Part shown: positions 7,186-62,496 of the stretch, one piece after another
Layout of the letters: each line of letters starts with the position of its first letter
Numbering within the stretch: the stretch's first letter is position 1
Virus record (IMG/VR): IMGVR_UViG_3300050120_000230
Location: 186,001-250,000 of that record
DNA length: 64,000 bases
Direction: 5' to 3' (one strand)
Notes under the pieces: generated by a model
Seen by the model: the letters and a program-made list of their open reading frames with translations, nothing else
The model's database searches: none
Told to the model about the DNA's origin: nothing
Position numbers and translations under genes: made by a program

Positions 7186-7569
7186 ATGTCGATCAAAGAT
7201 ATGCCGATGGGTGGCAACGTTAAGATTTTCACGATGACGAAAATCCCACCCAAGGTTGGCGTCCGCAGCCCCATGAATCGCGTGGGCAAGCCGTTCTACG
7301 ACACGACGAAGGGCCACGACACGATCACTGACATCACCAAAGAAATGTTCGAGAATTATTGGGGCGCCTCGATGCTTCGCAATGTGGGGTTCGAAGTTGT
7401 CCGAGTTTTTTCTATCCCGAATGGTGAGCGCGACAATCAAGAAACGATCATCAAGACCGTGAGAGCAGCGTGCAAAGGTAAGCTCGCTGCACTCGTGACC
7501 GATACCACCTTGAAAATCGCTCTCGAAAAAGAAGAGGACTCTGTCCTCCTGAAGATGTTCCTTGGATGA
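7186..7569 (+). CDS. hypothetical protein, FKL-motif family
   Basis: ends IALEKEEDSVLLKMFLG. Confidence 0.65.
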   Translation: MSIKDMPMGGNVKIFTMTKIPPKVGVRSPMNRVGKPFYDTTKGHDTITDITKEMFENYWGASMLRNVGFEVVRVFSIPNGERDNQETIIKTVRAACKGKLAALVTDTTLKIALEKEEDSVLLKMFLG

Positions 7570-8000
7570 CCTACGCCGTCAGCATCGCTGGCAACCAAGA
7601 CAGCGTCCATTGGGATAGCATCACCCGATGGGTCGAAGCCGTCGCTGGTCCACCCGGCGAACGCTGGTGTCTCTCCAACGACGACGAAGCCTCCATCTAC
7701 ATTTTCAAGCACCGAGCCCACGCCGAGCATTTCAAGCGAGTGTGGTCCTTCACGCCGCTGATTTTGGGTTACGAAGTGTGGGAAGAATTTTGCAATAGCC
7801 GTCTCAGCCGTGCAAGAGTGGATGATTATTGGAGGCATCGAAAGTGGCTCCCGAAAGTGGTCTTGTTTTTCGACCGACCAAAGGCGGTAAGTTCGACATT
7901 CGGCGGACAGAGACATTTTTCGATGCGGCATAAGTGTTGGTTCTTCGAAAACTACACCGATGCATGGCTATTCTGGATTGAGCATTACGAGGGCAAATAG
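7566..8000 (+). CDS. hypothetical protein, two FKL-like modules
   Basis: YIFKHRAHAEHFKRVW and FFENYTDAWLFW. Confidence 0.6.
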   Translation: MTYAVSIAGNQDSVHWDSITRWVEAVAGPPGERWCLSNDDEASIYIFKHRAHAEHFKRVWSFTPLILGYEVWEEFCNSRLSRARVDDYWRHRKWLPKVVLFFDRPKAVSSTFGGQRHFSMRHKCWFFENYTDAWLFWIEHYEGK

Positions 8001-8596
8001 TGCGCGTTACGACCGACATCGACATCGATTTTGCCGACCGCGATATGGCGCTGGTTGGTCTGATGCATGTCGCCGCCAGCATGGAGCAGAAAGGTCAGCT
8101 TTCTCGTCACCCGACTGGGGTCTACTTCCAGAACATCCCCACCGATCCGATCACGGGCTACTCGTCATTCAACTACGAGCAGGCGGCCGACAACGGCTAT
8201 TTCAAGATCGACTTCCTCAACAACTCGATCTACGGCGACGTGCGCGACGAAGAGCACCTCATTGCGTTGATGGCCGATCCCGACTGGGAAATGTTGGAGG
8301 TCGAAGAGATCGTGTCGATGCTCGCACACATCCACAACAGTTTCGGGTTGGTGAGCCAAATCCGACCCAAGAGCGTTGACGATCTGGCCGTTATCCTCGC
8401 GCTGATGCGGCCGGGCAAACGCCACCTGATGAGTCGTTCACGCGAAGAAATCGCCGCCGAAATCTGGAAGACCGGACAAGATGGTTTCGTCTTCAAGCGT
8501 GCCCACGCGATTGCATATGCGGTTAGCATTGTCGTGCAACTCAATTTGCTTTGCGAAAAAACCGCCGCAGCAATCGATGAGGCTGCTGGCCAATGA
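8000..8596 (+). CDS. miniature DnaE (Pol III alpha, family C) catalytic-core-like protein
   Basis: DIDID, HPTGVY, FKIDFL, LMRPG and FKRAHAIAYA correspond to DnaE palm/finger motifs; only 198 aa. Confidence 0.75.
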   Translation: MRVTTDIDIDFADRDMALVGLMHVAASMEQKGQLSRHPTGVYFQNIPTDPITGYSSFNYEQAADNGYFKIDFLNNSIYGDVRDEEHLIALMADPDWEMLEVEEIVSMLAHIHNSFGLVSQIRPKSVDDLAVILALMRPGKRHLMSRSREEIAAEIWKTGQDGFVFKRAHAIAYAVSIVVQLNLLCEKTAAAIDEAAGQ

Positions 8597-8955
8597 ACAC
8601 TTGCTACGTCGAGAATACCACTAGACGCCCGATGACACTCTGTTATGACGTGATGAAGGGATGGCATCACCTCTACACAATGGAGATGATGAAACTCCAA
8701 AGTGGTGAACTCACACTCAACGCGGGGCGCTTTGCTTCGTTCGTCAGAGATGAGCAACCGCACACTGTCACTTTGCGCGTGGATGGCAATGGCGATCAAA
8801 TGCAACGCCGTCTCGCGGAACTCATCACATGGATCGCGGGCCAGCCGGGACTATGGTCTTTCACGTTGAACGCCGAAAGTGTCGGCCGCACGTCGATCAC
8901 GTTTAGCTTCAATCACGTCACGACCGCCGTGACGTTCAAACTGGTCTGGTTTTGA
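8593..8955 (+). CDS. hypothetical protein, FKL-motif family
   Basis: ends FSFNHVTTAVTFKLVWF. Confidence 0.65.
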   Translation: MNTCYVENTTRRPMTLCYDVMKGWHHLYTMEMMKLQSGELTLNAGRFASFVRDEQPHTVTLRVDGNGDQMQRRLAELITWIAGQPGLWSFTLNAESVGRTSITFSFNHVTTAVTFKLVWF

Positions 8956-9674
8956 TGGGCAAAGTCATTCTCGTCCCCGCGATGTCGCGATTTGAAATCC
9001 CTGTCCCGGCCAATGGTGGCCAGTTCACCGGAATGTCGCACGTCTATCCAGTTCAGATGAACATGACATCGGGCTACAACGACGTGGTCGCTGGCGTGCA
9101 GTCGCATGTTCTGGCAGCGTCGGTGACGATTCAAGACCCGAAGACTGAATACCACTACCATGATCCAATGCTCAGCTATGCTGCGTTCTACAGCTTTTCA
9201 GGGTCTTCGGGCGGCACCAACATAACCAGTCGAGCACTCGGCGGCGCCTCGCCGCTGATTCACCGGGTTGATGCGACCATGGTCCCGCGCATGTTCTGGG
9301 ATCACACCGAAATTGAAGACATCGTCCACGAACGGTTCCATGGTCATTTGCTGGTTCAAATCAACAACCAGTCATCCGATTACCGTGAGCCATCGACTTG
9401 GAATTTCTGTGCGGCCGATGGTCGAGATAACGCGGCCTTGTCTGATATGTTGACCCGCCGCAAATCGAACAAGCTGGAATCGCACAAGGGACTGAGAACT
9501 GAGGTCGCCGCGTGGCTTCGAGCTAATGCGACCGACTACGATCTCTTCGATGCGGCCCATTTCGCCGAGCCGAATGACGAGGTTTACATTCGCAACGCGA
9601 CCGAAGCGATCCACTTCAAAATGAAGTGGCACAAACAAGAGCCGGACCCCGAGGAAATCGAGGTTCCGTTCTAG
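8955..9674 (+). CDS. hypothetical protein, FKL-motif family
   Basis: C-terminal YIRNATEAIHFKMKW. Confidence 0.65.
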   Translation: MGKVILVPAMSRFEIPVPANGGQFTGMSHVYPVQMNMTSGYNDVVAGVQSHVLAASVTIQDPKTEYHYHDPMLSYAAFYSFSGSSGGTNITSRALGGASPLIHRVDATMVPRMFWDHTEIEDIVHERFHGHLLVQINNQSSDYREPSTWNFCAADGRDNAALSDMLTRRKSNKLESHKGLRTEVAAWLRANATDYDLFDAAHFAEPNDEVYIRNATEAIHFKMKWHKQEPDPEEIEVPF

Positions 9675-9737
9675 CGATTTTGGTTGACCAAAATCATAAT
9701 TGTGAGAAACTGATCCTTCAATCGCAGGAGGGATCGC

Positions 9738-9992: not shown

Positions 9993-10528
9993 TCGACTAC
10001 GAAGACGGCATGGACGACGATGATGTGCGGCAGGCCGAAGACGAACGCCTCCGAGTCATGCGCGCAAGGCAAGCCGAGGTGGATTTCTGCGAGACCCTCT
10101 GTGGGATCGCCCCGTCAGAAGTCATGGGCCTGTTGGCCAAGATGATGCGGCAGGAGTTCTATCTCTTCCGCACGTCCACCGGCGGCAAGCGGGTTCGCAA
10201 ATGGAAAGGCGAGCTTCTCGGCATCAACGTCGAAGTGACCGAGGTGGATACCGGCAGTATGCCCCTCATGGGCTTTGATAACCGCATGTCGTCCGTGGAC
10301 TACCACGTCGAAAACGTCGAGTGGGAGTTTCGAGTTTGCGTGGGCGGCTCCGACAGCTATGTTCGTGACGACGTTCCGCAAGGCAACGCGAAACTGGGTA
10401 AGCATCGCGTCAAGGTATCCTATCCGTGGTTCGAGGGCGATGAAGACACCTATCGCAGCGACATGTCGTTGATCCGACTCATGGGTCTGAACAACGATGA
10501 CGAGGATTCGAAGGAAGTCATGATTTGA
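9989..10528 (+). CDS. hypothetical protein
   Basis: 179 aa; GTGA overlap. Confidence 0.65.
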   Translation: MIDYEDGMDDDDVRQAEDERLRVMRARQAEVDFCETLCGIAPSEVMGLLAKMMRQEFYLFRTSTGGKRVRKWKGELLGINVEVTEVDTGSMPLMGFDNRMSSVDYHVENVEWEFRVCVGGSDSYVRDDVPQGNAKLGKHRVKVSYPWFEGDEDTYRSDMSLIRLMGLNNDDEDSKEVMI

Positions 10529-10773
10529 AGCCGACTAAGCCGCTTCCGACACACGCAGTTCGCCTGAATCCAATCGACCACGGTTATGCTCTCCGATCCG
10601 TTGCCGCAAGCTGGCGAGGCGTTCGGTATGACATTCGACCGGAAATCAGAACTTGGATGAGGGCCAATTTCAAGCACTTCCGCTACGACCGCGTTCATCG
10701 ACGGTATGGCGAAGTCATCATCCGTTTCGATGACCCCAGAGACGCGGTGCTGTTCAAGCTCTTCATGTCCTAA
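10525..10773 (+). CDS. hypothetical protein, FKL-motif family
   Basis: ends IRFDDPRDAVLFKLFMS. Confidence 0.7.
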   Translation: MKPTKPLPTHAVRLNPIDHGYALRSVAASWRGVRYDIRPEIRTWMRANFKHFRYDRVHRRYGEVIIRFDDPRDAVLFKLFMS

Positions 10774-10780
10774 ATATGGG

Positions 10781-12867: not shown

Positions 12868-12894
12868 GGTTAACGCCCCATTGAAGTAGTTATG

Positions 12895-12929
12895 AGGGGC
12901 GGGGGCAAGTTCTCCCGCCCCTTTTTCTT
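12895..12929 (+). terminator. intrinsic terminator
   Basis: AGGGGCGGG.../...CCCGCCCCT stem followed by TTTTCTT. Confidence 0.8.
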
Positions 12930-12937
12930 GACACGAC

Positions 12938-14784: not shown

Positions 14785-14811
14785 GCGTTCACCCATCGGC
14801 AATACTGGGAG

Positions 14812-14836
14812 AGGCGGGGCATGTCCCCGCCTTTTC
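14812..14836 (+). terminator. intrinsic terminator
   Basis: AGGCGGGG-N5-CCCCGCCT followed by TTTCT. Confidence 0.8.
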
Positions 14837-14843
14837 TATTTGG

Positions 14844-14871
14844 TTGACGAGAATCACTTCTGGGGTAAACT
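14844..14871 (+). promoter_or_regulatory. early/host-type promoter
   Basis: TTGACG-N16-TAAACT. Confidence 0.65.
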
Positions 14872-15342: not shown

Positions 15343-15524
15343 TGCGTCGCGAAGTCGTAACCGTGGGGGCGCTTTTGCGTCGTGGCTTCCGGCGAATGCT
15401 GGACCAAGAGGGTGTTTCCTATTCGGAAGACAGGGGGTTCCTCGACAGCCAGTTCATCGTCAAGGGTGAACCCGAGGCGATGGCCCGCGTCGAAAAGCGC
15501 ATCAAGGACACGCTCGGGAAATGA
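15342..15524 (+). CDS. small hypothetical protein
   Basis: TGATG coupling; 60 aa. Confidence 0.65.
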   Translation: MRREVVTVGALLRRGFRRMLDQEGVSYSEDRGFLDSQFIVKGEPEAMARVEKRIKDTLGK

Positions 15525-16090
15525 AGGCCATTTCCAAAGCCATCAAACGCGTTGAGGTAAAGGCCACCATCGAACGCAAGTATGAGGTGGTTCTCACGAA
15601 CAGCGAGAACCAGACCATTTGCGCGCTGCTGACCAATTCGCTCCGCGAGGCCCTCACCGAGGCAGCGGAGTGGGCCGACTTCTGTGGCATCGTTCTAACG
15701 CCGTATCGCGTCATGGGTAAGATCGTAGAGCCGGTCACCAAGGACACCTACAAGCAAACCACGCTCAAGACGTTCGCGCAGCTTCATGCGGAATATCGGA
15801 CGAGCGGTGGCGAACTGAATTGGAACAAGCTGATGCATTGGGAGTGGCAACGCTTCCGGGGCACCTACAAGGACAAGGAAGCCATGAAGTTGTGGCTCCT
15901 GCCGCATTTCATGGAGAGCAAGCCGCCGACGTTTGATGAGGCGGTGGCCCGTGCAGGGACCAAAGACTCCCCGGCCGTCGAATGGCTGAGCGCCAACGCC
16001 ACGGGCTCGTGGATGCCTTCCAAGGGCGGCTATCGGTTCTCCGATGATCGAGATGCCGCTCTGTTCAAACTGTTTTTCGCTGGAAACTAG
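15521..16090 (+). CDS. hypothetical protein, FKL-motif family
   Basis: ends YRFSDDRDAALFKLFFAGN. Confidence 0.7.
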   Translation: MKAISKAIKRVEVKATIERKYEVVLTNSENQTICALLTNSLREALTEAAEWADFCGIVLTPYRVMGKIVEPVTKDTYKQTTLKTFAQLHAEYRTSGGELNWNKLMHWEWQRFRGTYKDKEAMKLWLLPHFMESKPPTFDEAVARAGTKDSPAVEWLSANATGSWMPSKGGYRFSDDRDAALFKLFFAGN

Positions 16091-18508: not shown

Positions 18509-18757
18509 TCAGGGCGGATAATCCACCCAGAACCCCAGTTTGAACATCACGCCGTGTTCCGCTTCCGTGAAGAACATGAACGTGTTGTTCCATTCGGCAT
18601 CATAGCCACTGTGATCCGCCCAACGCAGAGCGCGCCCAATTTCTTCGGTAGTCGCCCTTCGACAGAGTATGTCGAAAAATGCGACGCGAAACGGATACTT
18701 CTCCGCGAACTCGCCCGTCGCTTCAGCCGTCCAAGAGACTTTGTAGGACGGAATCAC
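18509..18757 (-). CDS. hypothetical protein, FKL-motif family
   Basis: GTG start overlapping the upstream stop; ends FFTEAEHGVMFKLGFW. Confidence 0.6.
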   Translation of the reverse strand: MIPSYKVSWTAEATGEFAEKYPFRVAFFDILCRRATTEEIGRALRWADHSGYDAEWNNTFMFFTEAEHGVMFKLGFWVDYPP

Positions 18758-19152
18758 GCGGCCAGTTCCAACAGATCGTCTTTCAGATCGTTCATGAACT
18801 GGTTGGCCAACCGCACGGCATGATCGGAGTTGGCTTTCACGCCATCCGCCCAAACCTGCTGAAGCTTCGCATCGGTGAACACCTCGTCGGCACACGATGC
18901 ATGTAGCGCGTCTCGGCGTTTCTGAATGATCGCGACGGCCTGCCGCACGTCGCTCATCGTAAACTGGCTGGTGGCGATTTTGCCGAACAGTTTTGCTTCC
19001 AAAGCGGCCGGGCCAAGTTCATCTCGGCGGCGAGACTGCGCTTCGTGCTTGGCGCCATGGCGATTACCTCCCACGAGGTTCCACGCGTTCGACAGGTGGC
19101 TCAGGCGAGCCCGGTCGGAACTGGACAAGGTGATGACGGTTTCGATCTTCAT
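18754..19152 (-). CDS. hypothetical protein
   Basis: GGAGG RBS before the ATG at 19152. Confidence 0.7.
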   Translation of the reverse strand: MKIETVITLSSSDRARLSHLSNAWNLVGGNRHGAKHEAQSRRRDELGPAALEAKLFGKIATSQFTMSDVRQAVAIIQKRRDALHASCADEVFTDAKLQQVWADGVKANSDHAVRLANQFMNDLKDDLLELAA

Positions 19153-19203: not shown

Positions 19204-19536
19204 CTAGTAGGATTTTAATTTCGGAGGGTTTTCCATACCGGGCCAATGTGTCGGCTCCGGCATGGACTCGTCACTGAAGAACAGCCTGAACATCGCGCGG
19301 TCACGTTCGTCTCTAAAGGAGAACGATCCGTAGCGATTGCTCCACACCATATGGCTCTTCAAGTTGCGGTCGCACCAGTCGAGCATCTCGTTCATTTTCA
19401 CGCGACTGTAGGGCTGAGCCATCGACATCTTGTCCGTCGATGTCCAATATTCACAGGCCGGATAGAGACCGAACTCAAGCGAACCTTTGCGCTGCTGAAG
19501 TTCGTTGATCGGTTCGAGATACCAGAACTTGGCCAT
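19204..19536 (-). CDS. hypothetical protein, FKL-motif family
   Basis: FSFRDERDRAMFRLFF. Confidence 0.7.
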   Translation of the reverse strand: MAKFWYLEPINELQQRKGSLEFGLYPACEYWTSTDKMSMAQPYSRVKMNEMLDWCDRNLKSHMVWSNRYGSFSFRDERDRAMFRLFFSDESMPEPTHWPGMENPPKLKSY

Positions 19537-20186
19537 CAGGCTGCTTCCGGCTGTCTGAAGTCGAACGTCAGCCTGAACTCGACCATGTCGGTCAGGTTCT
19601 CGAACATGAAGCGATACGGTTGTTTCGCCTTGGAGTCCTCAATCTCGTCTTCATCGGGAAGCCAGACGGTCCACCGCCCGCCGTGACGGGTCCTGCCCCA
19701 AATATCGCGCGCGACTTGCCCGGCCGTGGCATGGCCGACCAAGAATACGGCGGTGTGGAACTCGACACCCGCCTTGATGGCGTCCTTGAGATGATCTTCA
19801 GGGATGAAGCCCGAATGTGGGTCCGTCCAGAACGGCGTCTTGAAGTCGTTGAAAACTGGCGGCAGGCCGCTGTTGAAACGTATGATCCGAACAGTCTGCA
19901 AGCGGTTCCTCGTGCGTTTCTTCAAATCCACCATCGGATCATGCCCTTTGGCGATCAACGCTTTGTCTATCTGCCGGTCGCGAGAGATGTCATTGAACAT
20001 ACCGAACGCACTGTCGCGCATGGTCTTTTCCAAGACCATCGTCTTGATGTATCTCTTGATCTCCTGCTTTTGAGCATGGAGATTGTTGATGCCGGGCGAG
20101 CGCCCGTATTCCATCAGTTCCGCGATCTCACGACCGCGAGTAGCCTTGCCTCTATACCATTCGAGGATTTCTTTGCGGTAAGGCAT
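19536..20186 (-). CDS. hypothetical protein, FKL-motif family
   Basis: TAATG coupling; ends FMFENLTDMVEFRLTF. Confidence 0.7.
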   Translation of the reverse strand: MPYRKEILEWYRGKATRGREIAELMEYGRSPGINNLHAQKQEIKRYIKTMVLEKTMRDSAFGMFNDISRDRQIDKALIAKGHDPMVDLKKRTRNRLQTVRIIRFNSGLPPVFNDFKTPFWTDPHSGFIPEDHLKDAIKAGVEFHTAVFLVGHATAGQVARDIWGRTRHGGRWTVWLPDEDEIEDSKAKQPYRFMFENLTDMVEFRLTFDFRQPEAA

Positions 20187-40914: not shown

Positions 40915-41577
40915 ATGAATCCGCCGAACCCCCAAGACGTTGGCGAAATGGCTCGCCTTATTCGAATGATGAACGAAGGCGTTACCTTCGAAGACGACGC
41001 ACCGGAACAGCCGCAGTCGCGGTCACGCGCATCGATCATCGAAGGCGTCGTGGACTCATCTCCTACCAGCCTCGATCCGTCTGTCGCCGCCATGAAGTCT
41101 ATCTTGGAAGCGTTCAACGGCACCGGCAGCCCGGCCGATGCACTGGCAGATCGTTCCGTCATCGACCGCGAGTTGCGCGAAGCCCTGATTACCGAAGCGA
41201 CCCAGACAGGCACGCGCATCGGTAGCTGGGAGATCATCGTCAACGAAAACGATCAAGGTCTCAAGAGTTTCGACGTGACGAATGTCCACACCGGCGAACC
41301 CATCGCCACCGACCTGAGTCTCTATGACGCCGCCCACGGTATCGTGCGTGCGCTCAACGAAGGTCTGATGATTAACAGCAGCCGCGTGCGCGACATCCTG
41401 TCGGCTGAATCTGAATACGAACGTGCCCGTCAGAATGCAGCCGAGTTCCGCGAACGTGGCCGCGTCCTCGAAAGCCGTGGAGATCAACGTGCCGCCGTGA
41501 TGGAAGATCGTTTCGACGTGGCGCTCAGCCAAGCCAAGGATGCTCGCTCGCGTCTGATGAGACTAGCTAAGCTCTAA
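40915..41577 (+). CDS. probable head-assembly protein with C-terminal coiled coil
   Basis: GGAG RBS; acidic N-terminal half; helical C-terminus. Confidence 0.65.
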   Translation: MNPPNPQDVGEMARLIRMMNEGVTFEDDAPEQPQSRSRASIIEGVVDSSPTSLDPSVAAMKSILEAFNGTGSPADALADRSVIDRELREALITEATQTGTRIGSWEIIVNENDQGLKSFDVTNVHTGEPIATDLSLYDAAHGIVRALNEGLMINSSRVRDILSAESEYERARQNAAEFRERGRVLESRGDQRAAVMEDRFDVALSQAKDARSRLMRLAKL

Positions 41578-41841
41578 GTCTTCGGTCTCGCCGACCCACC
41601 GCATTTTGAAATGCAGTCTGTCCGTTTCGGACCTGAACCACATCACGAACCGCCCGGTTTCACCCGGCGGCAACGCATACCGAATATGCAGTTTCCAGTC
41701 GTCCTTTGGGATGGTGTCGTTGCACCACGCCTCGATCTGCGGCTTGAGCATCGGGTCATGATGTAGGTCTTCTGGCTGGAAGACAAACGATCCATCAATC
41801 GCCATCCGATGCGGATAGTAGGCGCCGATCCTATGCGGCAC
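41563..41841 (-). CDS. hypothetical protein, FKL-motif family
   Basis: MWFRSETDRLHFKMRW. Confidence 0.65.
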   Translation of the reverse strand: MPHRIGAYYPHRMAIDGSFVFQPEDLHHDPMLKPQIEAWCNDTIPKDDWKLHIRYALPPGETGRFVMWFRSETDRLHFKMRWVGETEDLELS

Positions 41842-51722: not shown

Positions 51723-52742
51723 TTGTCCGATTCTCAACACAACCTGCTGACGCCGGGTTTCGATCTCACGCTGCGTCCGATGAAATACCCCCAATTTTAC
51801 GATGCCTTCGTCAAGGCCCAAGACAACAACTGGACGGTTCAGGAAATCTCGTTCGGAACCGACATCGCCGATCTTCGTGAAAAGCTTACGCCCGGCGAAC
51901 GACACATCGTGTCCCGCCTCGTGGCATTCTTCGCTACCGGAGACTCCATCGTCGGCAACAATGCCGCGCTCACGCTCTACAAGCATGTGAACAGCCCGGA
52001 AGCCCGCCTCTATTACAGCCGCCAGATTTACGAAGAGGCGCTGCACGTCCAATTTTATCTGACGCTTCTCGACAACTACGTCACCGACCACGCCGAGCGT
52101 GCGGAAATGTTCGACGCCATCAACAACATCCCGAGCGTCAAGGCCAAGGCCGAGTGGACGTTCAAGTGGATGGATCAAATGAACGCCATCGACATCATCG
52201 AGACGGACGAACAGCGCAAGACATTCCTTATGAACCTGTTGGCGTTCACGATGGGCGTCGAGGGTCTCTTCTTCTACGCAGCGTTCGCATACGTCTACTA
52301 CCTGCGCGACCGTGGCCTCCTGCATGGACTGGCATCCGGTACGAACTGGGTGTTCCGCGACGAGTCGTGGCACATGCGATTCGGTTTCATGATCGTGGAT
52401 ACGATCCGCAAAGAGATGCCCCACCTGTGGGACGCGGATATGGAAGCCCGCGTCTACGCGATGGTTGAGGAAGCAATTCGCTGCGAGATGATGTTCGCGG
52501 AAGACGTGCTGTCGGTCGGCGCCATGGGCCTCAGCCTGAAGGACATGGAGGAATATCTTCGTTTCGTGGCCGATGGCCATCTGCGTCGTCTGGGCATGGC
52601 TCCTGCCTACAATGCGACATGCCCCTTCGACTTCATGCTGAAACAGGATGTGCAGGCGCTCACAAGTTTCTTCGAACGCACGGTGGCGGAATACACCGTG
52701 GGGATCGGCGGCGAAGTCGATCTGAAAGTCGAGGATTGGTGA
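51723..52742 (+). CDS. nrdB: class Ia ribonucleotide reductase beta subunit
   Basis: TGD, EALHVQFY (radical Tyr), VEGLFF and DESWH; TTG start with GGAG; TAAATA at 51686. Confidence 0.96.
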   Translation: MSDSQHNLLTPGFDLTLRPMKYPQFYDAFVKAQDNNWTVQEISFGTDIADLREKLTPGERHIVSRLVAFFATGDSIVGNNAALTLYKHVNSPEARLYYSRQIYEEALHVQFYLTLLDNYVTDHAERAEMFDAINNIPSVKAKAEWTFKWMDQMNAIDIIETDEQRKTFLMNLLAFTMGVEGLFFYAAFAYVYYLRDRGLLHGLASGTNWVFRDESWHMRFGFMIVDTIRKEMPHLWDADMEARVYAMVEEAIRCEMMFAEDVLSVGAMGLSLKDMEEYLRFVADGHLRRLGMAPAYNATCPFDFMLKQDVQALTSFFERTVAEYTVGIGGEVDLKVEDW

Positions 52743-53041
52743 TGACGGAAGAATTCGAGATCGATCTCGCAGACATTCCCAACATGGAAATTCCAGATAC
52801 GGAAGCCTTGGGCTGGGTTCTCGATCTCCCTTTGGGAAGCGTGGGCAGTCTGGTTGACAGGGAATTGGTGCTTTCTGAAGACGTGCAAGAATGGATGGAT
52901 ATCAACATCCGTGACCGATATTGGATTTTCAATCGGTTCGCCGCCGCCTTTGTATATCTAAGCACTCTTAACAGTATGCCCATCGAATTTAATTTCACGT
53001 CGGAGCGCGACTACATCGCCTTCAAGATGCGGTGGTCATGA
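52742..53041 (+). CDS. hypothetical protein, FKL-motif family
   Basis: ends FNFTSERDYIAFKMRWS. Confidence 0.7.
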   Translation: MTEEFEIDLADIPNMEIPDTEALGWVLDLPLGSVGSLVDRELVLSEDVQEWMDINIRDRYWIFNRFAAAFVYLSTLNSMPIEFNFTSERDYIAFKMRWS

Positions 53042-53370
53042 TGGACGATGAAATCCCGAAAGACATCGTCGATCTATACGTGGACGGTTTCGGCGCGGAC
53101 ATGGAAGTCCCCGATAGCGAGCCCATCGCCGGGTGGATGCTCATCGTCCCTCCTAATAGCGGGGCATTCGGTTTTTACCCGGTTGGATCGTTCGATAAGA
53201 ACGGCCGCCGCCGCCTTCAGCGTGGCCATGATCTCACCCCTGAAGCCGAGGAATGGGCCGAAATGAACCTACGTCATCGGTATTGGGTGCTTGGTGATGG
53301 GGCATTGGGGATGGAAGTGTATTTCACCGATGAGCATGACTACATCTATTTCAAGATGCGTTACGGCTGA
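53038..53370 (+). CDS. hypothetical protein, FKL-motif family; paralog of the upstream gene
   Basis: MEVPD..P..GW...RYW...VYFTDEHDYIYFKMRYG. Confidence 0.7.
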   Translation: MMDDEIPKDIVDLYVDGFGADMEVPDSEPIAGWMLIVPPNSGAFGFYPVGSFDKNGRRRLQRGHDLTPEAEEWAEMNLRHRYWVLGDGALGMEVYFTDEHDYIYFKMRYG

Positions 53371-55964: not shown

Positions 55965-57749
55965 ATGGCTGGTTTGAAGACTCGATATAAAGTTGTCGGC
56001 ATCGGCATCTTGGCTCTGGGAGGCGTCTTCGGTCTGAAGTCTGCCGTTCAACATGGCCTGATCCCGGCTCCGGCCGCTCTCAAGGCGATGATCCCGCAGA
56101 AGGCTGACATCGCGACGCTGGGTGGCAACATCCAGATCGCGCCGACCCAGACCTATGACCTGTCCGCCGCGCCGGAAGCGAACGCGCCCAAGCGCACGTT
56201 CCTGATGATTCCGTGGCAGGGCGGCGGTGCGCTGACGCTCGCCAACGGCGGCGCCGGTGACGCCAGCGGCACGTTGATGCAGAAGTTCGCGGGTTCGAAC
56301 GTGAACCTTCAGCGGCAGGACGACTACGGCAAGATGCAAGAGCAACTGCTGAAGTTCGCCAGCGGCTTCAAGGCCGGTCAAGCGAACCCGGATGGTGCGG
56401 CCTACGTCCAGATCATGGGCGACGGTGGCCCGGCGTTCTTCGCCGGTGTCGAGCCCCAGATGGAGAAGCTCGGCCTTCACCTGAAGATCGTCGGCGTGAC
56501 CGGCTTCTCGCACGGCGAAGACAAGTGCATGGCGCCGGACGTGAACGGTGACCCGAACAAGGCCCGTGGCGACCTGATCGCCGCCGTGCCGCGCGACGGT
56601 GACTGGAACATCTGCGTCAAGTGGGCGTCGGACAACAACATTCCGATCAACACCGACAACACGGTCTACGATCCGACCGCCATCAACTTCGTCGATACGG
56701 ACAGCTTCACGCAAGCCGACGACAAGTTCATCGCGGGCGCCTACGAAGATCGTGACGAAGCCAAGAACGGCATCAAGACGGGCAAGCGCGTCCACGTCCA
56801 GATCAACGGCGTGGCGACGTGGACTCCCGGCGACGTGACCGTCATGGAGAAGAAGGGTGGCGTCGTTTCGCTGGCCTCGACCAAGGACTACGACCAGCAG
56901 ATGCCCGCCGTCATCATCGGCATCAAGGAAGAAATGGACAAGCACCCGGCGTTCGTCACCGGTATGCTTCGGGCCGTTGACCGCGCATCGTTCCAAGTCC
57001 GCACGACTTCGGATGGTGTGCAGAAGATGTCGGAAACTGAAGCCAAGGTGTTCGGCTCGGCGGGCGGCGACGAAGCGAAGCCGGAATACTGGGCACGCTT
57101 CTTCAACGGCTTCGACAGCCCGGACGGCAAGGTGAAGCTCGGTGGGTCGCGCGTTTCGACGCTGGCCGAAATCCGTGACTTCATGGGCATGGGCACCGGC
57201 ACCCTGAACGTCTACCAAGGCGTCTGGAACGTGTTCGGCGACTACGACAAGACCTTCTACCCGAAGCTGGTCCCCAGCTATCCGAAGTTCGCTGACGTGG
57301 TCGATACGAGCTACATCAAGGCCGCCCTCAACGGCGTCCAGATGACGGCTCCGACTTCGACGGCGTTCTCCACCCAGAAGACGATGTCGGCGACCGTGTC
57401 CAAGAAGGCCGTCTCCATCGAGTTCGACAACGGTAAGGCGACGATCCGCCCGACCAGCCGCGCTCAACTGGTGGACATCGCCAACCAGTCCGGCATGACC
57501 AGCCTGCTGATCCGCATCGAAGGTCACACGGACAACACCGGCAACCCGGATGCGAACGTCGCCCTGTCGCGGGCTCGCGCTCAAGCGGTGGCTACGGCGC
57601 TGACGAACATGGCCCCGGCCACGTTCCCGGCGACCCGTATGGAAGTGCGTGGCTACGGCGACACGAAGCCGGTCAACGATACGGCCGACCAGAACTCGCC
57701 GACCGAGCGCGCGAAGAACCGCCGCGTCGAGGTGATCCTCGGCAACTAA
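55965..57749 (+). CDS. ABC transporter substrate-binding protein (NitT/TauT-like) fused to a C-terminal OmpA-like peptidoglycan-binding domain
   Basis: N-terminal membrane anchor; IEFDNGK, EGHTDNTG, LSRARAQAV, GYG and NRRVEV OmpA motifs. Confidence 0.85.
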   Translation: MAGLKTRYKVVGIGILALGGVFGLKSAVQHGLIPAPAALKAMIPQKADIATLGGNIQIAPTQTYDLSAAPEANAPKRTFLMIPWQGGGALTLANGGAGDASGTLMQKFAGSNVNLQRQDDYGKMQEQLLKFASGFKAGQANPDGAAYVQIMGDGGPAFFAGVEPQMEKLGLHLKIVGVTGFSHGEDKCMAPDVNGDPNKARGDLIAAVPRDGDWNICVKWASDNNIPINTDNTVYDPTAINFVDTDSFTQADDKFIAGAYEDRDEAKNGIKTGKRVHVQINGVATWTPGDVTVMEKKGGVVSLASTKDYDQQMPAVIIGIKEEMDKHPAFVTGMLRAVDRASFQVRTTSDGVQKMSETEAKVFGSAGGDEAKPEYWARFFNGFDSPDGKVKLGGSRVSTLAEIRDFMGMGTGTLNVYQGVWNVFGDYDKTFYPKLVPSYPKFADVVDTSYIKAALNGVQMTAPTSTAFSTQKTMSATVSKKAVSIEFDNGKATIRPTSRAQLVDIANQSGMTSLLIRIEGHTDNTGNPDANVALSRARAQAVATALTNMAPATFPATRMEVRGYGDTKPVNDTADQNSPTERAKNRRVEVILGN

Positions 57750-57757
57750 GACGGCTT

Positions 57758-57790
57758 GGGGTGGGCTTCGGCCCACCCCTTTCCTCTTTC
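57758..57790 (+). terminator. intrinsic terminator between the binding protein and permease genes
   Basis: GGGGTGGGC-TTCG-GCCCACCCC followed by TTTCCTCTTT. Confidence 0.8.
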
Positions 57791-57815
57791 TCAGTAAGAT
57801 TTTCGGAGACCCGTC

Positions 57816-58625
57816 ATGGGCGTCCAATCCCTCCTGCTGCCTAACGAGAAGGTCAACGAGCGCGTTTCGCTGATCCTGACAGGCGGTTGGGTTTTGTTCA
57901 TTCTCGCCTTCTGGTGGGGTGTCCTGCCGCACGCTTCTGCGCTGATCCCCACCCCGCCCGAAGTGGCGAAGGCTGGGTTGATCCAATGGAACCAAGGCGC
58001 GGTCATCGTTGCCGACTCCAACGGTATTCATGCTGGCCAACTCATCATCAGCATTTTCACCAGCCTATCGGCGATCTTTTTCGCTCTTCTGTTGGGCCTA
58101 TCACTGGCCTATCTCTCGACGATCCCGTTGTTCAAAGCGCCGGTGCGCTTCATTGGGAGTGCGAGGGTTCTCAGCCTTACAGGCATGACCTTCATTTTCG
58201 TTCTGGCTACGCCCAATGGCTACTGGCTCAAGGTGTCGGTTCTGATCTTTGCCATCGTGGTTTTCTTCATCAACGCCATGCTTCAAGTGATCGAAGACAT
58301 TCCACAAGGTCGGTTCGACCATGCTCGAACCCTTGGAATGAATCACTGGGAAGTTCTTCGTGAAGTGGTCATCCGGGGAACACTTGCTTCCGCGTTTGAT
58401 ACGCTGCGGATGAATGCCGCCATGGCGTGGATGATGCTGACCATGGTCGAAAGCATGTCGCGTTCCGGCGGTGGGATTGGCATCGTGCTGGTCGAGCTTG
58501 CTCGGACGGCCAACTATGCCGCAATCTTCAGCGTTCAGTTGATGATTTTCGTCGTCGGTATCGCCCAAGACAAACTCGTGCAGTTCGCCAAATTGGCAGC
58601 CTGCCCTTACACGAAGGGTCAATAG
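57816..58625 (+). CDS. ABC transporter permease (SsuC/TauC-like)
   Basis: about six TM helices; EAA-like loop DHARTLGMNHWEVLREVV. Confidence 0.88.
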   Translation: MGVQSLLLPNEKVNERVSLILTGGWVLFILAFWWGVLPHASALIPTPPEVAKAGLIQWNQGAVIVADSNGIHAGQLIISIFTSLSAIFFALLLGLSLAYLSTIPLFKAPVRFIGSARVLSLTGMTFIFVLATPNGYWLKVSVLIFAIVVFFINAMLQVIEDIPQGRFDHARTLGMNHWEVLREVVIRGTLASAFDTLRMNAAMAWMMLTMVESMSRSGGGIGIVLVELARTANYAAIFSVQLMIFVVGIAQDKLVQFAKLAACPYTKGQ

Positions 58626-59510
58626 ATGAGCGGCGTCGTGGGTTACGAATACGAACTCAAAGACACGCTCTTGGACGTGCGCGACGTGAGCATGGTCTAT
58701 GGAGACAATGTCGTCCTGCGTGATGTGAGTTTCCAGATCAAAGATATCGTCCGGCCGGGTAAAACACAGGGTCAGGTCAATGCTTTGCTGGCGCCCTCCG
58801 GCACGGGGAAAACTCAGCTATTTCGATGTATCGCTGGGCTCCAAGTTCCGACCAACGGTGAAGTTTTCTTGAACCGCCATGATTGCACCGCTGATGGCAA
58901 AGCCGTCGTGGATGACAAGGGCCAGCCAATTTTGAAGCCGGTGACAGTTGGGTCAGTCGGCGTGGTTGCACAGGACTATCCGCTGTTCAATCACCTGTCC
59001 GTCTGGGACAATCTGATGATGGCGGCCGAAATCAAGATGAACAAGGCCGCCGCCACAGAAAAAGTCGAAGCGTTGCTTCAACGTTTCGGTCTCTCCGAAC
59101 GACGCACGTTCTATCCGCAGGCGCTTTCTGGCGGCCAGCGGCAACGCGTGGCGATCATCCAGCAAATGGTCTGCAATGGTAAATTGCTGCTGATGGATGA
59201 ACCATTCTCCGGTCTCGATATCATCATGAAGGAAGAGGTGCAGAACCTCATCTCCGACGTGGCCGCGTCCGACGAGTGGAATTCTGTCATCGTCACGACC
59301 CATGACATCCAAAGCGCCATCGCCGTGGCCGACACGATTCTTCTGTTGGGCAAAGAACGCAAGCCCAACGGTGAGATCGTCCCCGGCGCCTACATCAAGC
59401 ACACCTACAATTTGATGGACCTTGGGCTGACTTGGCACCCGGATATCGCTTCTCTTCCGGCATTTGCCGAACTTGAACGCGAAATCAAGGCGCGGTTTAG
59501 GGAACTGTGA
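58626..59510 (+). CDS. ABC transporter ATP-binding protein (SsuB/TauB-like)
   Basis: APSGTGKT, Q-loop VAQD, LSGGQRQR, LLMDEPFSGLD and TTHD. Confidence 0.93.
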   Translation: MSGVVGYEYELKDTLLDVRDVSMVYGDNVVLRDVSFQIKDIVRPGKTQGQVNALLAPSGTGKTQLFRCIAGLQVPTNGEVFLNRHDCTADGKAVVDDKGQPILKPVTVGSVGVVAQDYPLFNHLSVWDNLMMAAEIKMNKAAATEKVEALLQRFGLSERRTFYPQALSGGQRQRVAIIQQMVCNGKLLLMDEPFSGLDIIMKEEVQNLISDVAASDEWNSVIVTTHDIQSAIAVADTILLLGKERKPNGEIVPGAYIKHTYNLMDLGLTWHPDIASLPAFAELEREIKARFREL

Positions 59511-59758: not shown

Positions 59759-59827
59759 TCCATTTTCGTTGACGAAATTATAATCTGGGGGCATGATGCT
59801 TGTAACAAAACAAGCACGAGGCACCCC

Positions 59828-60373: not shown

Positions 60374-60591
60374 TGGCTGGTCTTCGTCGTCTTGCAAAGA
60401 TGTTCGGCGGTCTCACCGCAATCAGCACCAATCCGGTCACCGGGGAAGTGACGAAGGTCGAACACGTTTGGGACTACGTCGCCGATGAACCGACCACTAG
60501 CGACGAGATGCCTGTGGGTTCTGAAAGATGGAAGGCGTCTGAACGCGTGAAATGGGCTAATGTCGGTGGCGGCGAAGACAAATTGATCTGA
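60373..60591 (+). CDS. small hypothetical protein
   Basis: TGATG coupling; 72 aa. Confidence 0.6.
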   Translation: MAGLRRLAKMFGGLTAISTNPVTGEVTKVEHVWDYVADEPTTSDEMPVGSERWKASERVKWANVGGGEDKLI

Positions 60592-60611
60592 GTCGTGAAG
60601 CCGACATTTAC

Positions 60612-60639
60612 TTGACGGAAATTGGTTTGCGAATAAGCT
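60612..60639 (+). promoter_or_regulatory. early/host-type promoter giving a leaderless argS mRNA
   Basis: TTGACG-N16-TAAGCT, ATG 7 nt downstream, no SD. Confidence 0.6.
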
Positions 60640-60646
60640 GCACCGT

Positions 60647-62236
60647 ATGGACATTCTAGAGCAACTTTTGAGTCAGGCATTCGCCGCCGAAGGTTTGGAC
60701 CCCGCACTTGCTGTGGTGTCGCCTTCGGAGCGGCCGGACCTTGCCGATTTTCAATCGAACGGAGTGTTTCTAGCGGCCAAGGCTGCGCGGATAAATCCTC
60801 GGGCTCTGGCCGAGCGGATCGTTGAACGGCTCAAACACCCAGACATCACGTTCGAAGTAGCCGGGCCGGGCTATATCAACATGACGCTGGGTCCGGCTCT
60901 GCTCGAAAAGATGCTGCTGGACAACAGTCCGATCCCACAGGTTTCCGGTCGGATCGTGTTGGATTTCGGTGGACCGAATGTCGCCAAGCCGATGCATGTG
61001 GGTCATATGCGGTCTCTGGTGATCGGTGACGCCCTTCAACGGATTTTGCGGTTCGTGGGCTACGAGGTGCTGTCCGACATCCACCTCGGCGACTGGGGCC
61101 TCCAAATGGGCCTGTTGCTGGCGGCCTTGGAAGGCACACCGCTACATGACTACAATATCGCGCTGTTGGAAAAAACCTATCCACAGGCGGCGGCTCTTGC
61201 CAAAGAGGATGAACCCTTCCGGTTGAAGGCACAGATGTTCACGCGCCTACTGCAACAAGGTGATCCCGAGCTTATGCAGCGGTGGCGGAAAATGGTCTGC
61301 GTGAGCATGACCACCGTCAATCGGGAGCTTGCTGCTCTGAAAGTCAATTTCACTCTCATGAAGGGTGAAAGTGACGTTCAGGACTTGATCCCCGATATGA
61401 TCGCGAGCTTCGTCGCCAAAGGGATCGTAGAGGAAGACAACGGGGCGCTCGTCGTCCGGGTTGGAGAACCTCCACTCATCCTGCGGAAGTCGGATGGTGC
61501 GGCTCTCTATTCCACGACCGATCTCGCGACGATCCTTGATCGGAAGGCAGCCTTCGATCCCGACAAGATCATCTATGTGACCGATGAACGGCAGCAACTT
61601 CACTTCAAGCAGGTTTTCGCGGCGGCCGAGATGGCTGGTTATCTGAACGGCAAGCTCGAACTCGAACACATCTGGTTCGGGACGGTGAACGACGCCAATG
61701 GCAAGCCACTCAAGACGCGGGCTGGTGGTGTGCCGAAGTTGCACGACCTGATCGAAGAAGCGATCACCAAGGCGTCCGAGAAGAATGCTGAATCGGCGAT
61801 CCCGGTGGCTATGGCGGCGTTGAAGTTCGCCGATCTACAAAACCCTCGGACAGGGTCGTATTCTTTCGATCTCGATAAGTTCCTGAGCTTCGAAGGCAAG
61901 ACCGGCCCATATCTGCTCTATCAAGCGGTGCGGATCAAATCCATCCTCGTCAAGTCGGTTGAACCCGGCCCGATTACGCTTGAGACCGCACAGGAGCGGG
62001 CTCTTGCGTTCAAGCTGGTGTTCGGTTTCCGGCAGGCGCTCGATGGCGCCGTGCGGCGATTGTCGCCCAAAGAGATCGCCGATCACGCCTACGATCTCGC
62101 GCAATCCTTCTCGAAGTATTATGCGAACACGCAGATCGGAGAATCACCGTCGAGGGTGGCCCTCTCTGCCAAGGTGTTGGCCCAACTGGAATGCTGCTTG
62201 GGTCTGATGGGTATCGATATCCCCGAGCGGATGTGA
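60647..62236 (+). CDS. argS: arginyl-tRNA synthetase
   Basis: N-terminal add-on domain (ADFQSN, VAGPGYIN), PNVAKPMHVGHMRS HIGH motif, GDWGLQMG, KSDG..LY.TTDLA, EGKTGPYLLY and DALR-type anticodon domain. Confidence 0.95.
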   Translation: MDILEQLLSQAFAAEGLDPALAVVSPSERPDLADFQSNGVFLAAKAARINPRALAERIVERLKHPDITFEVAGPGYINMTLGPALLEKMLLDNSPIPQVSGRIVLDFGGPNVAKPMHVGHMRSLVIGDALQRILRFVGYEVLSDIHLGDWGLQMGLLLAALEGTPLHDYNIALLEKTYPQAAALAKEDEPFRLKAQMFTRLLQQGDPELMQRWRKMVCVSMTTVNRELAALKVNFTLMKGESDVQDLIPDMIASFVAKGIVEEDNGALVVRVGEPPLILRKSDGAALYSTTDLATILDRKAAFDPDKIIYVTDERQQLHFKQVFAAAEMAGYLNGKLELEHIWFGTVNDANGKPLKTRAGGVPKLHDLIEEAITKASEKNAESAIPVAMAALKFADLQNPRTGSYSFDLDKFLSFEGKTGPYLLYQAVRIKSILVKSVEPGPITLETAQERALAFKLVFGFRQALDGAVRRLSPKEIADHAYDLAQSFSKYYANTQIGESPSRVALSAKVLAQLECCLGLMGIDIPERM

Positions 62237-62496
62237 TGCGCTGGTTCTGGGAAATGCTCTATCGCCGCCAAGCGGTAGAGGTTGTCCTTGATCGAGATTG
62301 CATCAGAGTTCTCGGCGGTGATGGTCCCACGACCTTGGCCAGACTACGAGATGTCGAGCGCGAATGGTGTCGTCACAACGTTCGCAGGCCATTCGGTCTA
62401 TATTGCCGATGGCGAGGCGTAGGGGGCGGATACCATGCGTATCTGTGGTTCATTGAGCCGAAAGATGCTGCACTCTTCAAAATGTTTCAAACGTGA
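62236..62496 (+). CDS. hypothetical protein, FKL-motif family
   Basis: ends LWFIEPKDAALFKMFQT. Confidence 0.65.
   Translation: MRWFWEMLYRRQAVEVVLDRDCIRVLGGDGPTTLARLRDVEREWCRHNVRRPFGLYCRWRGVGGGYHAYLWFIEPKDAALFKMFQT

What the first reader, a model, noticed from the sequence alone, without database searches (positions are those of the whole stretch)
7186..62496. At least 13 dispersed paralogs ending in F-x4-D-A-x2-F-K-[LM]-x-[WF]
Seen in ORFs with left coordinates 7186, 7566, 8593, 8955, 10525, 15521, 18509, 19204, 19536, 41563, 52742, 53038 and 62236 (weakly 29805), on both strands, with divergent N-termini and usually a W-[CMA]-x2-N/H helix ~25 aa upstream. Inference: a small conserved domain used as a docking or oligomerisation module for variable payloads, a gene-accordion-like anti-defence or host-interaction family.
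Basis: seen in the sequence. Interest (0 to 1): 0.6.

Follow-up and report, generated by a model that had tools for sequence, protein, structure and literature searches.

The report
Huge small-protein family in a megaphage
A giant soil bacteriophage devotes about one gene in eight (some 80 genes, 12 of them in this window) to small proteins that all end in the same undescribed 45-70-residue domain; the family is common in related giant phages, including a cultured one, and nobody knows what it does.

Summary
Twelve of the 13 listed ORFs share a C-terminal module: a helix (W-x3-N), two strands, then a helix (D-A-x2-F-K-[LM]-x-[WF]) that usually stops 0-2 residues before the stop codon. ORFs 7566 and 29805 are not members.

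The window lies in a 415-kb viral contig, a relative of Sinorhizobium phage Phosso and Agrobacterium phage Atu_ph07. A profile built from the 12 copies finds about 80 copies in the contig and none in shuffled or reversed ORFs. That is about 13% of its genes.

Related megaphages carry 25 to at least 148 copies, Phosso 47, and Pseudomonas phage PA5oct 4. T4 has none, and 300 Rhizobiales-order genomes have none. A metagenome-wide search gives 4,760 cluster representatives.

No Pfam, PHROG, NCBIfam or PADLOC model matches. AlphaFold predicts beta-alpha-beta-beta-alpha, a ferredoxin-like fold without its last strand. No specific structural relative was found.

Copies are about 26% identical, and their N-terminal parts are unrelated. 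This is an old, fast-diversifying multigene family, not a recent gene accordion.

Function is unknown. My best guess is a mini-scaffold that carries variable binding surfaces or peptides for host takeover. One conserved member carries the EF-Tu-binding "Gol" segment of the capsid protein.

The parts
7186..7569 (+). Weak family member (127 aa); domain at about 7438-7566
   Evidence: Iterated HMM E 6e-4 and 8e-4. F is replaced by L in the FK[LM] motif.
7566..8000 (+).
   Evidence: HMM E=1.6, not significant. Only a loose F..DA..FW resemblance.
8593..8955 (+). Family member (120 aa); domain 8800-8952
   Evidence: HMM E 1e-6; the domain ends at the stop codon.
8955..9674 (+). Family member with a long N-terminal part (239 aa); domain 9483-9638, followed by an acidic tail of about 13 aa
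   Evidence: HMM E 3e-12. No Pfam or atlas lead for the N-terminal 185 aa.
10525..10773 (+). Family member (82 aa, TTG start overlapping the upstream stop); domain 10624-10770
   Evidence: HMM E 4e-14. AlphaFold model m19ee062d16ef: helix 39-48, strands 52-56 and 64-68, helix 71-81, with block-mean pLDDT 78-94 over residues 31-82.
15521..16090 (+).
   Evidence: E 4e-8.
18509..18895 (-). Weak family member; domain 18521-18652
   Evidence: HMM E 1e-3. Best of six frames by codon usage.
19204..19536 (-). Family member (110 aa); domain 19267-19407, followed by a 22-aa tail
   Evidence: HMM E 4e-11.
19536..20186 (-). Family member (about 216 aa); domain 19554-19739
   Evidence: HMM E 9e-5. No Pfam hit for the N-terminal part.
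41563..41805 (-). Family member (80 aa); domain 41587-41757
   Evidence: HMM E 3e-14. AlphaFold model m2697d6e6bb03, pLDDT 79.5: strand 2-8, helix 22-31, strands 37-43 and 50-57, helix 60-70.
52742..53041 (+). Family member whose ATG overlaps the stop of the RNR beta gene; domain 52862-53038
   Evidence: HMM E 5e-12. The RNR small subunit is read from the translation of 51723-52742; the RNR large subunit upstream is confirmed by Pfam.
53038..53370 (+). Family member whose ATG overlaps the stop of the preceding member; domain 53224-53367
   Evidence: HMM E 5e-13.
62236..62496 (+). Family member whose ATG overlaps the stop of the arginyl-tRNA synthetase gene; domain 62335-62493
   Evidence: HMM E 6e-12. 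ArgRS at 60647-62236.

Best explanation
SHOWN. The ORFs belong to a real, undescribed protein family that is almost restricted to phages. Its hallmark is a 45-70-residue alpha+beta domain at the very C-terminus of small cytosolic proteins (median about 105 aa). The predicted order is beta1-alpha1-beta2-beta3-alpha2, a ferredoxin-like sandwich lacking the last strand. This megaphage, at least 415 kb and related to Phosso and Atu_ph07, carries about 80 copies: roughly 13% of its genes and 6.7% of its DNA. They sit as singletons and short, translationally coupled arrays between core genes. The copies are old and strongly diverged. Only the buried aromatic and aliphatic positions and the helix caps are kept. 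The N-terminal extension, the beta2-beta3 loop and overall charge differ from copy to copy. The repertoire turns over quickly between related phages.

INFERRED (mechanism). The domain is a small, stable scaffold. Its variable surfaces and appended N-terminal (occasionally C-terminal) peptides each bind a different host or phage protein. The family would then be a diversified repertoire of accessory binders or modulators for host takeover and counter-defence, rather than a set of enzymes or a module that docks on one shared partner. One conserved member, in which the domain carries just the EF-Tu-binding 'Gol' segment of the major capsid protein, illustrates the 'scaffold plus payload peptide' design.
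For: Family reality:
- The profile finds 80 ORFs and none in shuffled or reversed controls.
- Codon usage is best in frame for 80 of 80.
- Conserved residues use mixed synonymous codons.
- Two independent AlphaFold models give the same topology, with pLDDT 74-80 overall and above 90 in the core.

Distribution:
- 4,760 cluster representatives in 1.84 billion proteins.
- 25 to at least 148 copies in five related 359-608-kb viral contigs.
- Phosso has 44-47 copies, Atu_ph07 4 weak ones, PA5oct 4, T4 and XaC1 none.
- Bacteria: only a Methylobacterium chromosome and a Sphingobium MAG contig, and 0 of 300 other genomes of that order.

Scaffold-plus-variable-part design:
- N-termini are unrelated to one another and to everything else in the genome, yet some are conserved at 40-85% identity in other phage contigs.
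- pI ranges from below 5 to above 9, and there are essentially no membrane segments.
- The conserved columns are W, F, F, [ML], W plus D-A and K.

Fast turnover:
- Only 1 clear ortholog pair between this genome and Phosso, and 65 of 80 members have their best hit inside their own genome.
- Only 5 of 80 members have any Phosso hit at E<1e-5, against 42% of large genes.

Payload example:
- ORF L012:2032-2583:- is the family domain followed by a piece aligning to T4 gp23 residues 90-142 (49% identity, E 7e-17). The same architecture occurs in another megaphage, at L139:1195-1692:+.
- The Gol region of gp23 binds EF-Tu (review PMC3014915).
Against: There is no direct evidence for any binding partner, expression time or phenotype.
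- The claim that conserved residues are buried is read from the sequence pattern and the secondary structure, not from model coordinates.
- Other small genes of this phage turn over almost as fast (13% with a Phosso hit), so rapid turnover is not specific to the family.
- Family genes are not enriched downstream of sigma-70-like promoters (13 of 138 downstream genes, against 13% genome-wide), so early expression is not shown.
- The strict C-terminal position and the near-invariant lysine could equally mark a shared interaction site.
Confidence: 0.42

Rival explanations
1. Common-partner docking module. The conserved C-terminal domain binds one shared hub, such as a phage or host Clp protease, a chaperone or the translation apparatus. 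The variable N-terminus then selects the substrate or target, making the proteins a family of adaptors.
For: - The domain ends 0-2 residues before the stop codon in most copies, and W, F, K and W are nearly invariant.
- ClpP genes have family members next to them in three phages. In this genome, ClpP at 406512-407051 lies between members at 405109-405474 and 407076-407471. In PA5oct, ClpP EST35_0272 is followed by EST35_0274 and EST35_0275. In G004, ClpP at 117553-118128 lies beside a member at 118260-118403.
- The missing fourth strand leaves a sheet edge that a partner strand could complete (inference).
Against: - The conserved positions follow a buried-core periodicity.
- Adjacency to ClpP is expected fairly often by chance when there is about one member per 5 kb, and it is absent in Atu_ph07 and G003.
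- No interaction was tested against any candidate hub.
Confidence: 0.22
2. Nucleic-acid-binding regulators. The domain would be a truncated RRM/ACT/KH-like fold, and each copy would act as a small RNA- or DNA-binding regulator, for example of the operon it is translationally coupled to.
For: - The best fold matches are RRM, ACT, KH and Cas6-type ferredoxin-like domains (VIA Z 4-5.8; Foldseek top rows are RRMs).
- A weak profile match to the UPF3 RRM.
- Several members overlap the stop codon of enzyme genes (RNR beta, ArgRS, ClpP).
Against: - Z values below 6 indicate only a common arrangement.
- No RRM or ACT Pfam model matches any of 110 members.
- There is no conserved basic or exposed aromatic patch, and pI runs from below 5 to above 9.
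- The variable face of the sheet is not conserved.
Confidence: 0.12
3. Virion-packaged or assembly-related proteins. The domain would target small proteins to the prohead or take part in capsid assembly.
For: - Conserved fusions of the domain with fragments of the major capsid protein gp23.
- The nearest ESM-atlas cluster that has any Pfam family carries Gp23 in 13% of its members.
Against: - The three PA5oct members inspected lack the 'ESI-MS/MS' virion note that their neighbours carry. PA5oct has 93 virion proteins by mass spectrometry (PMC7318152).
- Only one or two of 80 copies carry capsid fragments.
Confidence: 0.07
4. Not a functional family: a recurring DNA signal or junk ORFs that happen to translate into a similar peptide.
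For: - Most members are unannotated 'hypothetical' proteins.
- F43 is encoded almost only by TTC (76:1), which hints at some nucleotide-level constraint at that one codon.
Against: - Synonymous variation at the other conserved residues.
- Best-frame codon usage for 80 of 80.
- Confident, concordant fold predictions driven by covariation.
- 0 hits in shuffled or reversed ORFs.
- Thousands of diverged relatives.
Confidence: 0.02

Closest known systems
Lineage-specific expansion of a zinc ribbon in Bacillus phage G (about 35 copies; Iyer et al. 2021, PMC7824862)
   Same: One small domain multiplied many times in a single giant phage genome. Its function is unknown and is suspected to be regulatory or conflict-related.
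   Different: A different fold with no metal ligands. Copy numbers are two- to four-fold higher (80 here, at least 148 in a relative). The expansion is shared by a whole clade of soil megaphages and is attached to unrelated N-terminal parts.
[quoted passage not shown]
   Same: Genome growth by duplication, with some tandem arrays. The largest here has 8 genes, at genome 272822-275054.
   Different: The copies here are not highly similar (median 26%, maximum 58% identity within the domain). Most are dispersed singletons, so the amplification is ancient and diversified, not recent and dosage-driven.
Multigene families of large eukaryotic DNA viruses (ASFV MGF families, poxvirus and giant-virus ankyrin/BTB/F-box expansions; my own knowledge, not tested here)
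   Same: Tens to hundreds of diverged paralogs built on one scaffold. They vary between strains and are generally tied to host interaction.
   Different: A bacterial virus with a much smaller domain. No sequence or fold relationship to those families was found.
Ferredoxin-like alpha+beta domains (ACT, RRM, KH-like)
   Same: The predicted beta-alpha-beta-beta-alpha order, with two helices packed on one face of the sheet. VIA Z up to 5.8 and 5.2.
   Different: The fourth strand is missing and there are no RNP motifs. No Pfam ACT or RRM match. The Z values are in the range of unrelated common arrangements.
T4 gp23 Gol peptide / Lit exclusion system (relevant only to the fusion member outside the window)
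   Same: The fusion ORF contains the segment that aligns to T4 gp23 residues 90-142. This includes the most conserved part of gp23, the Gol region that binds EF-Tu. The exact Gol residue numbers, 93-122, are from my memory.
   Different: Here the segment is a free-standing gene fused to the family domain, separate from the full-length capsid gene seen in related phages. No Lit-like protease or EF-Tu binding was examined.

Membership tests
Lineage-specific expansion of one domain in a giant phage (a kind, not a sequence family) | Many paralogs in one genome, detected by a single profile well above background | tested here: met
   80 ORFs in 415 kb; 0 hits in reversed or shuffled ORFs. 25 to at least 148 copies in related contigs.
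Gene accordion (recent adaptive amplification) | Tandem, near-identical copies | tested here: not met
   Domain identity has a median of 26% and a maximum of 58%. 32 of 49 clusters are singletons. Neighbours are only slightly more alike than distant copies (29% against 26%, p=3e-4).
Any curated protein family (Pfam-A 2025, PHROGs v4, NCBIfam 20, PADLOC 2) | A significant match to a family model | tested here: not met
   0 of 110 members match PHROGs, NCBIfam or PADLOC at E<=1e-3. In Pfam there are only two single spurious hits.
RRM | RNP1/RNP2 motifs, a four-stranded sheet (beta4 present), and a Pfam RRM_1 match | tested here: not met
   No Pfam match. The chain ends after alpha2. Foldseek E is above 1.
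ACT domain | A beta-alpha-beta-beta-alpha-beta fold with a Pfam ACT match | tested here: not met
   VIA Z 5.2-5.4 to the TyrA ACT domain only. No Pfam match. The last strand is absent.
Ferredoxin-like alpha+beta sandwich (fold class) | Strand and helix order beta1-alpha1-beta2-beta3-alpha2(-beta4), with helices on one face | tested here: inconclusive
   Two AlphaFold models agree. These are predictions, beta1 has pLDDT of only 55-70, and the best Z is below 6.
PH-like / Ran-binding domain | A seven-stranded sandwich closed by a C-terminal helix | tested here: not met
   Only the last strand plus helix resembles the RanBP2 RanBD, at E 0.07. Whole proteins of 51-80 aa are too short for that fold.
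Virion or internal head proteins | Detected in purified virions | tested here: inconclusive
   PA5oct members EST35_0247, 0274 and 0275 lack the ESI-MS/MS note. Small proteins can be missed, and there are no data for Phosso.
Anti-defence proteins | Demonstrated inhibition of a bacterial defence system | not testable with these tools

The most novel reading that the evidence does not exclude
This is the largest paralog expansion yet seen in any bacteriophage: 80 to at least 148 copies, about an eighth of all genes. It would be a new minimal scaffold that giant soil phages use as a 'binder library', where each copy presents a different surface or captured peptide (such as the capsid Gol segment) to neutralise or redirect a different host factor or defence sensor. 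Expansion of this family would then be a major route by which these phages reached 0.4-0.6 Mb.
Probability: 0.25. Interest if true: 0.85.

Novelty: new variant of a known kind. Interest (0 to 1): 0.68.

Why it matters
Most genes of giant phages have no known function. This analysis shows that a large share of that unknown fraction in one clade (13% of the genes here) is a single family. It can now be named, modelled and searched: 4,760 clusters already exist in public data.

The family also occurs in cultured, tractable systems. Sinorhizobium phage Phosso has 47 copies and Pseudomonas phage PA5oct has 4, so its function can be tested directly by deletion, expression and pull-down.

If the members are diversified binders of host factors, they would be a rich source of new modulators of bacterial physiology and immunity. 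They would also help explain how phage genomes grow to half a megabase.

Tried and rejected
- The literal regular expression matches only one ORF, so I replaced it with a profile.
- The search for related loci with the alignment failed because no stretch was conserved enough. A degenerate DNA pattern was used instead.
- tblastn of one member against INPHARED phages gave no match at E<=1. The family is too diverged for pairwise search.
- megablast of 20 kb of the window against phages gave no match.
- Homodimer prediction (complex prediction, two copies) gave no verdict. It is no evidence for or against oligomerisation.
- Fold searches (Foldseek against PDB and BFVD, VIA wide twice, ESM atlas by shape and by features) returned only generic ferredoxin-like rows or uncharacterised phage proteins.
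- The N-terminal parts of the longest members gave no Pfam or atlas lead.
- Promoter analysis: sigma-70-like sites are mostly intergenic (35 of 45), but family genes are not enriched behind them. The T4 late motif TATAAATA occurs only 3 times. Expression class therefore stays open.
- The PA5oct paper has no supplement held, so per-gene expression of its members could not be read.
It was re-run from stored references.
- No alternative genetic code was needed.
Full report
CONTEXT. The window is bases 186001-250000 of a 415,409-bp IMG/VR viral contig, rated 72% complete by CheckV, with about 55% G+C. The window encodes a superfamily-2 helicase, a Toprim primase, a DnaB-like helicase and both subunits of ribonucleotide reductase. 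It also encodes an arginyl-tRNA synthetase, an OmpA-domain protein and ABC-transporter parts. The DnaB-like helicase is 51% identical to that of Sinorhizobium phage Phosso (469 kb) and 50% identical to that of Agrobacterium phage Atu_ph07 (490 kb). PA5oct-like Pseudomonas phages are next, at 43%. This is therefore an uncultured megaphage of the T4-related Atu_ph07/Phosso lineage. Its host is probably an alphaproteobacterium; that is an inference from these relatives and from the rare bacterial copies described below.

OBSERVATION. The literal motif matches one ORF only, but the degenerate pattern is real. Twelve of the 13 listed ORFs align over about 48 C-terminal residues. A profile built from these 12 finds 68 ORFs at E<=1e-3 and 81 at E<=1e-2 among the 5,880 stop-to-stop ORFs of the contig. 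After iteration it finds 80. It finds nothing at E<10 in reversed or shuffled copies of the same ORFs. The ORFs at 7566 (E 1.6) and 29805 (E 340) are not members, and 7186 and 18509 are weak members. All 80 ORFs score best in their own frame with a codon model trained on long non-family genes. Conserved residues are written with mixed synonymous codons. The conservation is therefore at protein level.

ANATOMY.
- Members are small: median about 105 aa, range about 52-239 aa.
- The domain ends 0-2 residues before the stop codon in most of them.
- Conserved columns are E/D, W (98%), N (70%), an aromatic (93%), F (88%), D (74%), A (77%), F (96%), K (92%), M/L and W/F (97%).
- The loop between the two strands varies from a few residues to more than 20.
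- The N-terminal parts (4-179 aa) have no BLASTP similarity to each other or to any other ORF in the genome.
- pI runs from below 5 to above 9, as for other small genes, and only one borderline hydrophobic segment exists.
- With my crude gene call of about 600 genes, the family makes up 13% of genes and 6.7% of the DNA. It forms 49 clusters, of which 32 are singletons; the largest array has 8 genes (genome 272822-275054).
- In the window, three members start at an ATG overlapping the stop of RNR beta, of a preceding member and of ArgRS.

FOLD. Two AlphaFold runs on different members and different alignments agree.
- Window 10525-10770: helix 39-48, strands 52-56 and 64-68, helix 71-81, plus a low-confidence N-terminal strand.
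- Window 41566-41805: strand 2-8, helix 22-31, strands 37-43 and 50-57, helix 60-70; mean pLDDT 79.5, pTM 0.64.

This is a beta-alpha-beta-beta-alpha unit, that is, a ferredoxin-like sandwich that stops before the fourth strand. Some relatives are only 51-61 aa long, so the N-terminal strand may be dispensable.

No specific structural relative was found.
- Foldseek against the PDB gives nothing below E=1.
- VIA-align gives Z of at most 5.8 and 5.2, to the Pol II N-terminal domain, ACT, RRM, KH and designed ferredoxin folds. By the tool's own calibration this is a common arrangement only.
- BFVD and the ESM atlas return only uncharacterised phage proteins.
- A profile search of PDB sequences gives a non-significant E of 0.07 to the last strand and helix of the RanBP2 Ran-binding domain and to a UPF3 RRM.

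DISTRIBUTION.
- The word-indexed search found only three outside relatives. One lies in a four-gene array on a Logan contig that is syntenic with genome 173.8-175 kb.
- The exhaustive profile search found 4,760 cluster representatives at E<=1e-3. Nearly all are small proteins with the domain at the C-terminus, and some have two or three copies. None of those looked up has a name.
- A degenerate DNA pattern hit 45 IMG/VR loci. The profile verified 42 of them, with up to 15 members in 7.3 kb, and many lie on contigs of 100-608 kb.
- Whole-record searches gave at least 148 matches in a 561-kb contig, 83 in a 417-kb contig, 66 in a 608-kb contig, 28 in a 519-kb contig with terminal repeats, and 25 in a 359-kb record.
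- Phosso has 44 (47 with my own scan), Atu_ph07 4 weak ones, PA5oct 4, and T4 and Xanthomonas phage XaC1 none.
- In GTDB species representatives, true members appeared only in the Methylobacterium carpenticola chromosome (1-2 copies) and on a Sphingobium MAG contig (3-4 copies). None of 300 other genomes of that order had a match at E<=1e-5.

KNOWN FAMILIES AND LITERATURE.
- No member matches Pfam, PHROGs, NCBIfam or PADLOC.
- In GenBank the Phosso, Atu_ph07 and PA5oct members are all 'hypothetical protein'.
- Iyer et al. 2021 called a roughly 35-copy zinc-ribbon expansion in Bacillus phage G 'unprecedented'.
- The papers on Atu_ph07, the Sinorhizobium jumbo phage AP-J-162 and soil huge phages do not mention paralogs or gene families.

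I found no description of this family in the library searched.

MODE OF EVOLUTION.
- Within the domain, pairwise identity has a median of 26% and a maximum of 58%.
- Copies less than 1.5 kb apart are slightly more alike than distant ones (29% against 26%, Mann-Whitney p=3e-4). This fits old local duplications followed by divergence and dispersal.
- Some paralogs, N-termini included, have orthologs at 40-85% identity on other phage contigs.
- Against Phosso only one clear ortholog pair exists, and 65 of 80 members find their best hit within their own genome.
- Only 5 of 80 members have any Phosso hit at E<1e-5. The figures for other genes are 45 of 334 small genes and 78 of 186 large genes.

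The family is therefore not a recent accordion. It is an ancient and rapidly diversifying repertoire.

FUNCTIONAL CLUES.
(a) One member just outside the window (L012:2032-2583:-, genome 252032-252583) has the domain followed by a segment matching Pfam Gp23 positions 3-45 (E 7.5e-18). That segment aligns to T4 gp23 residues 90-142 at 49% identity. A second megaphage has the same architecture (L139:1195-1692:+). Related phages also have a normal full-length capsid gene. This part of gp23 contains the Gol region, which binds EF-Tu and triggers the Lit protease in E. coli (review PMC3014915). The residue numbers 93-122 are from my memory. In Phosso, another member appears to carry a C-terminal gp23 fragment, but that match is below the Pfam cut-off.
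(b) ClpP genes are flanked by members in this genome, in G004 and in PA5oct, but not in Atu_ph07 or G003.
(c) The three PA5oct members inspected lack the virion mass-spectrometry note that their neighbours carry. They also lie outside the early region named in the PA5oct study.
(d) There is no enrichment behind sigma-70-like promoters.

None of these settles the function.

INTERPRETATION. What is shown is a new, phage-restricted small domain family with extreme copy numbers in one megaphage lineage. What I infer is that the domain is a structural scaffold. Its conserved residues look like core and caps. The variable surfaces and appended peptides would bind diverse targets, which fits a host-takeover or counter-defence repertoire (confidence about 0.4). 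It is favoured by the strict C-terminal position, the invariant lysine and the ClpP neighbourhoods. Nucleic-acid binding (about 0.1) rests only on generic fold resemblance. A virion role (below 0.1) rests on the capsid-fragment fusions. An artefact is excluded for practical purposes.

VERDICT. Novelty is a new variant of a known kind, namely lineage-specific domain expansions in giant viruses. Interest is 0.68, because the scale is surprising, the family is unnamed, and cultured phages make it directly testable.

Noticed in passing
L012:2032-2583:- (genome 252032-252583, just outside the window); also L139:1195-1692:+ in another megaphage: A family domain is fused to a free-standing copy of the capsid-protein segment that aligns to T4 gp23 residues 90-142, the EF-Tu-binding Gol region. 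The architecture is conserved in two megaphages. It might be an EF-Tu binder or a decoy for capsid-sensing defences.
   Followed up: partly
L083:1423-2181:+ (genome about 396.6-397.4 kb): A 252-aa ORF matches only parts of Pfam Gp23 (positions 99-192 and 316-353). No full-length major capsid gene was found in this 72%-complete contig, although relatives have one of 410-420 aa.
   Followed up: partly
window 12894-12955 and 14806-14871 (+): Strong GC-rich terminator hairpins are followed immediately by TTGAC(A/G)-16-TAxxxT promoters. This resembles the promoter-early stem-loop cassettes that shuffle small genes in T4-type phages (my own knowledge). Genome-wide, 35 of 45 sigma-70-like sites are intergenic.
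   Followed up: partly
genome 405109-407471 (L020); PA5oct 180349-182187 (L147); G004 117553-118403: The ClpP protease gene has family members directly beside it in three phages. In this genome the downstream member starts 25 bp after ClpP.
   Followed up: partly
all 80 copies; domain column 43: The near-invariant F of the F-K motif is encoded by TTC 76 times and by TTT once. The other conserved F is TTC 51 / TTT 21. This is an unexplained nucleotide-level bias, perhaps avoidance of TTTAAR.
   Followed up: no
genome 173784-174479 (L011:2787-3377:-) versus L021:521-1032: A two-domain ORF here corresponds to two separate neighbouring genes on a related Logan contig. In this genome the first domain's last helix is replaced, so neighbouring members appear to have fused. 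Multi-domain relatives are common among the top database hits.
   Followed up: partly
window 52742, 53038, 62236: Family members start at ATG codons that overlap the stop codons of RNR beta, a preceding member and arginyl-tRNA synthetase. This implies translational coupling to housekeeping-type phage genes.
   Followed up: no
window 55965-59510 and 60647-62236: The phage carries an OmpA-domain protein (594 aa), an ABC-transporter permease and ATPase pair, and a full arginyl-tRNA synthetase. These are unusual auxiliary genes for a phage.
   Followed up: no
L124 (Methylobacterium carpenticola contig_1, around 220 kb) and L109 (Sphingobium MAG contig): These are rare bacterial copies of the family (1-2 and 3-4, the latter in an array). 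They may mark prophage remnants or mis-binned phage DNA, and they hint at alphaproteobacterial hosts.
   Followed up: partly
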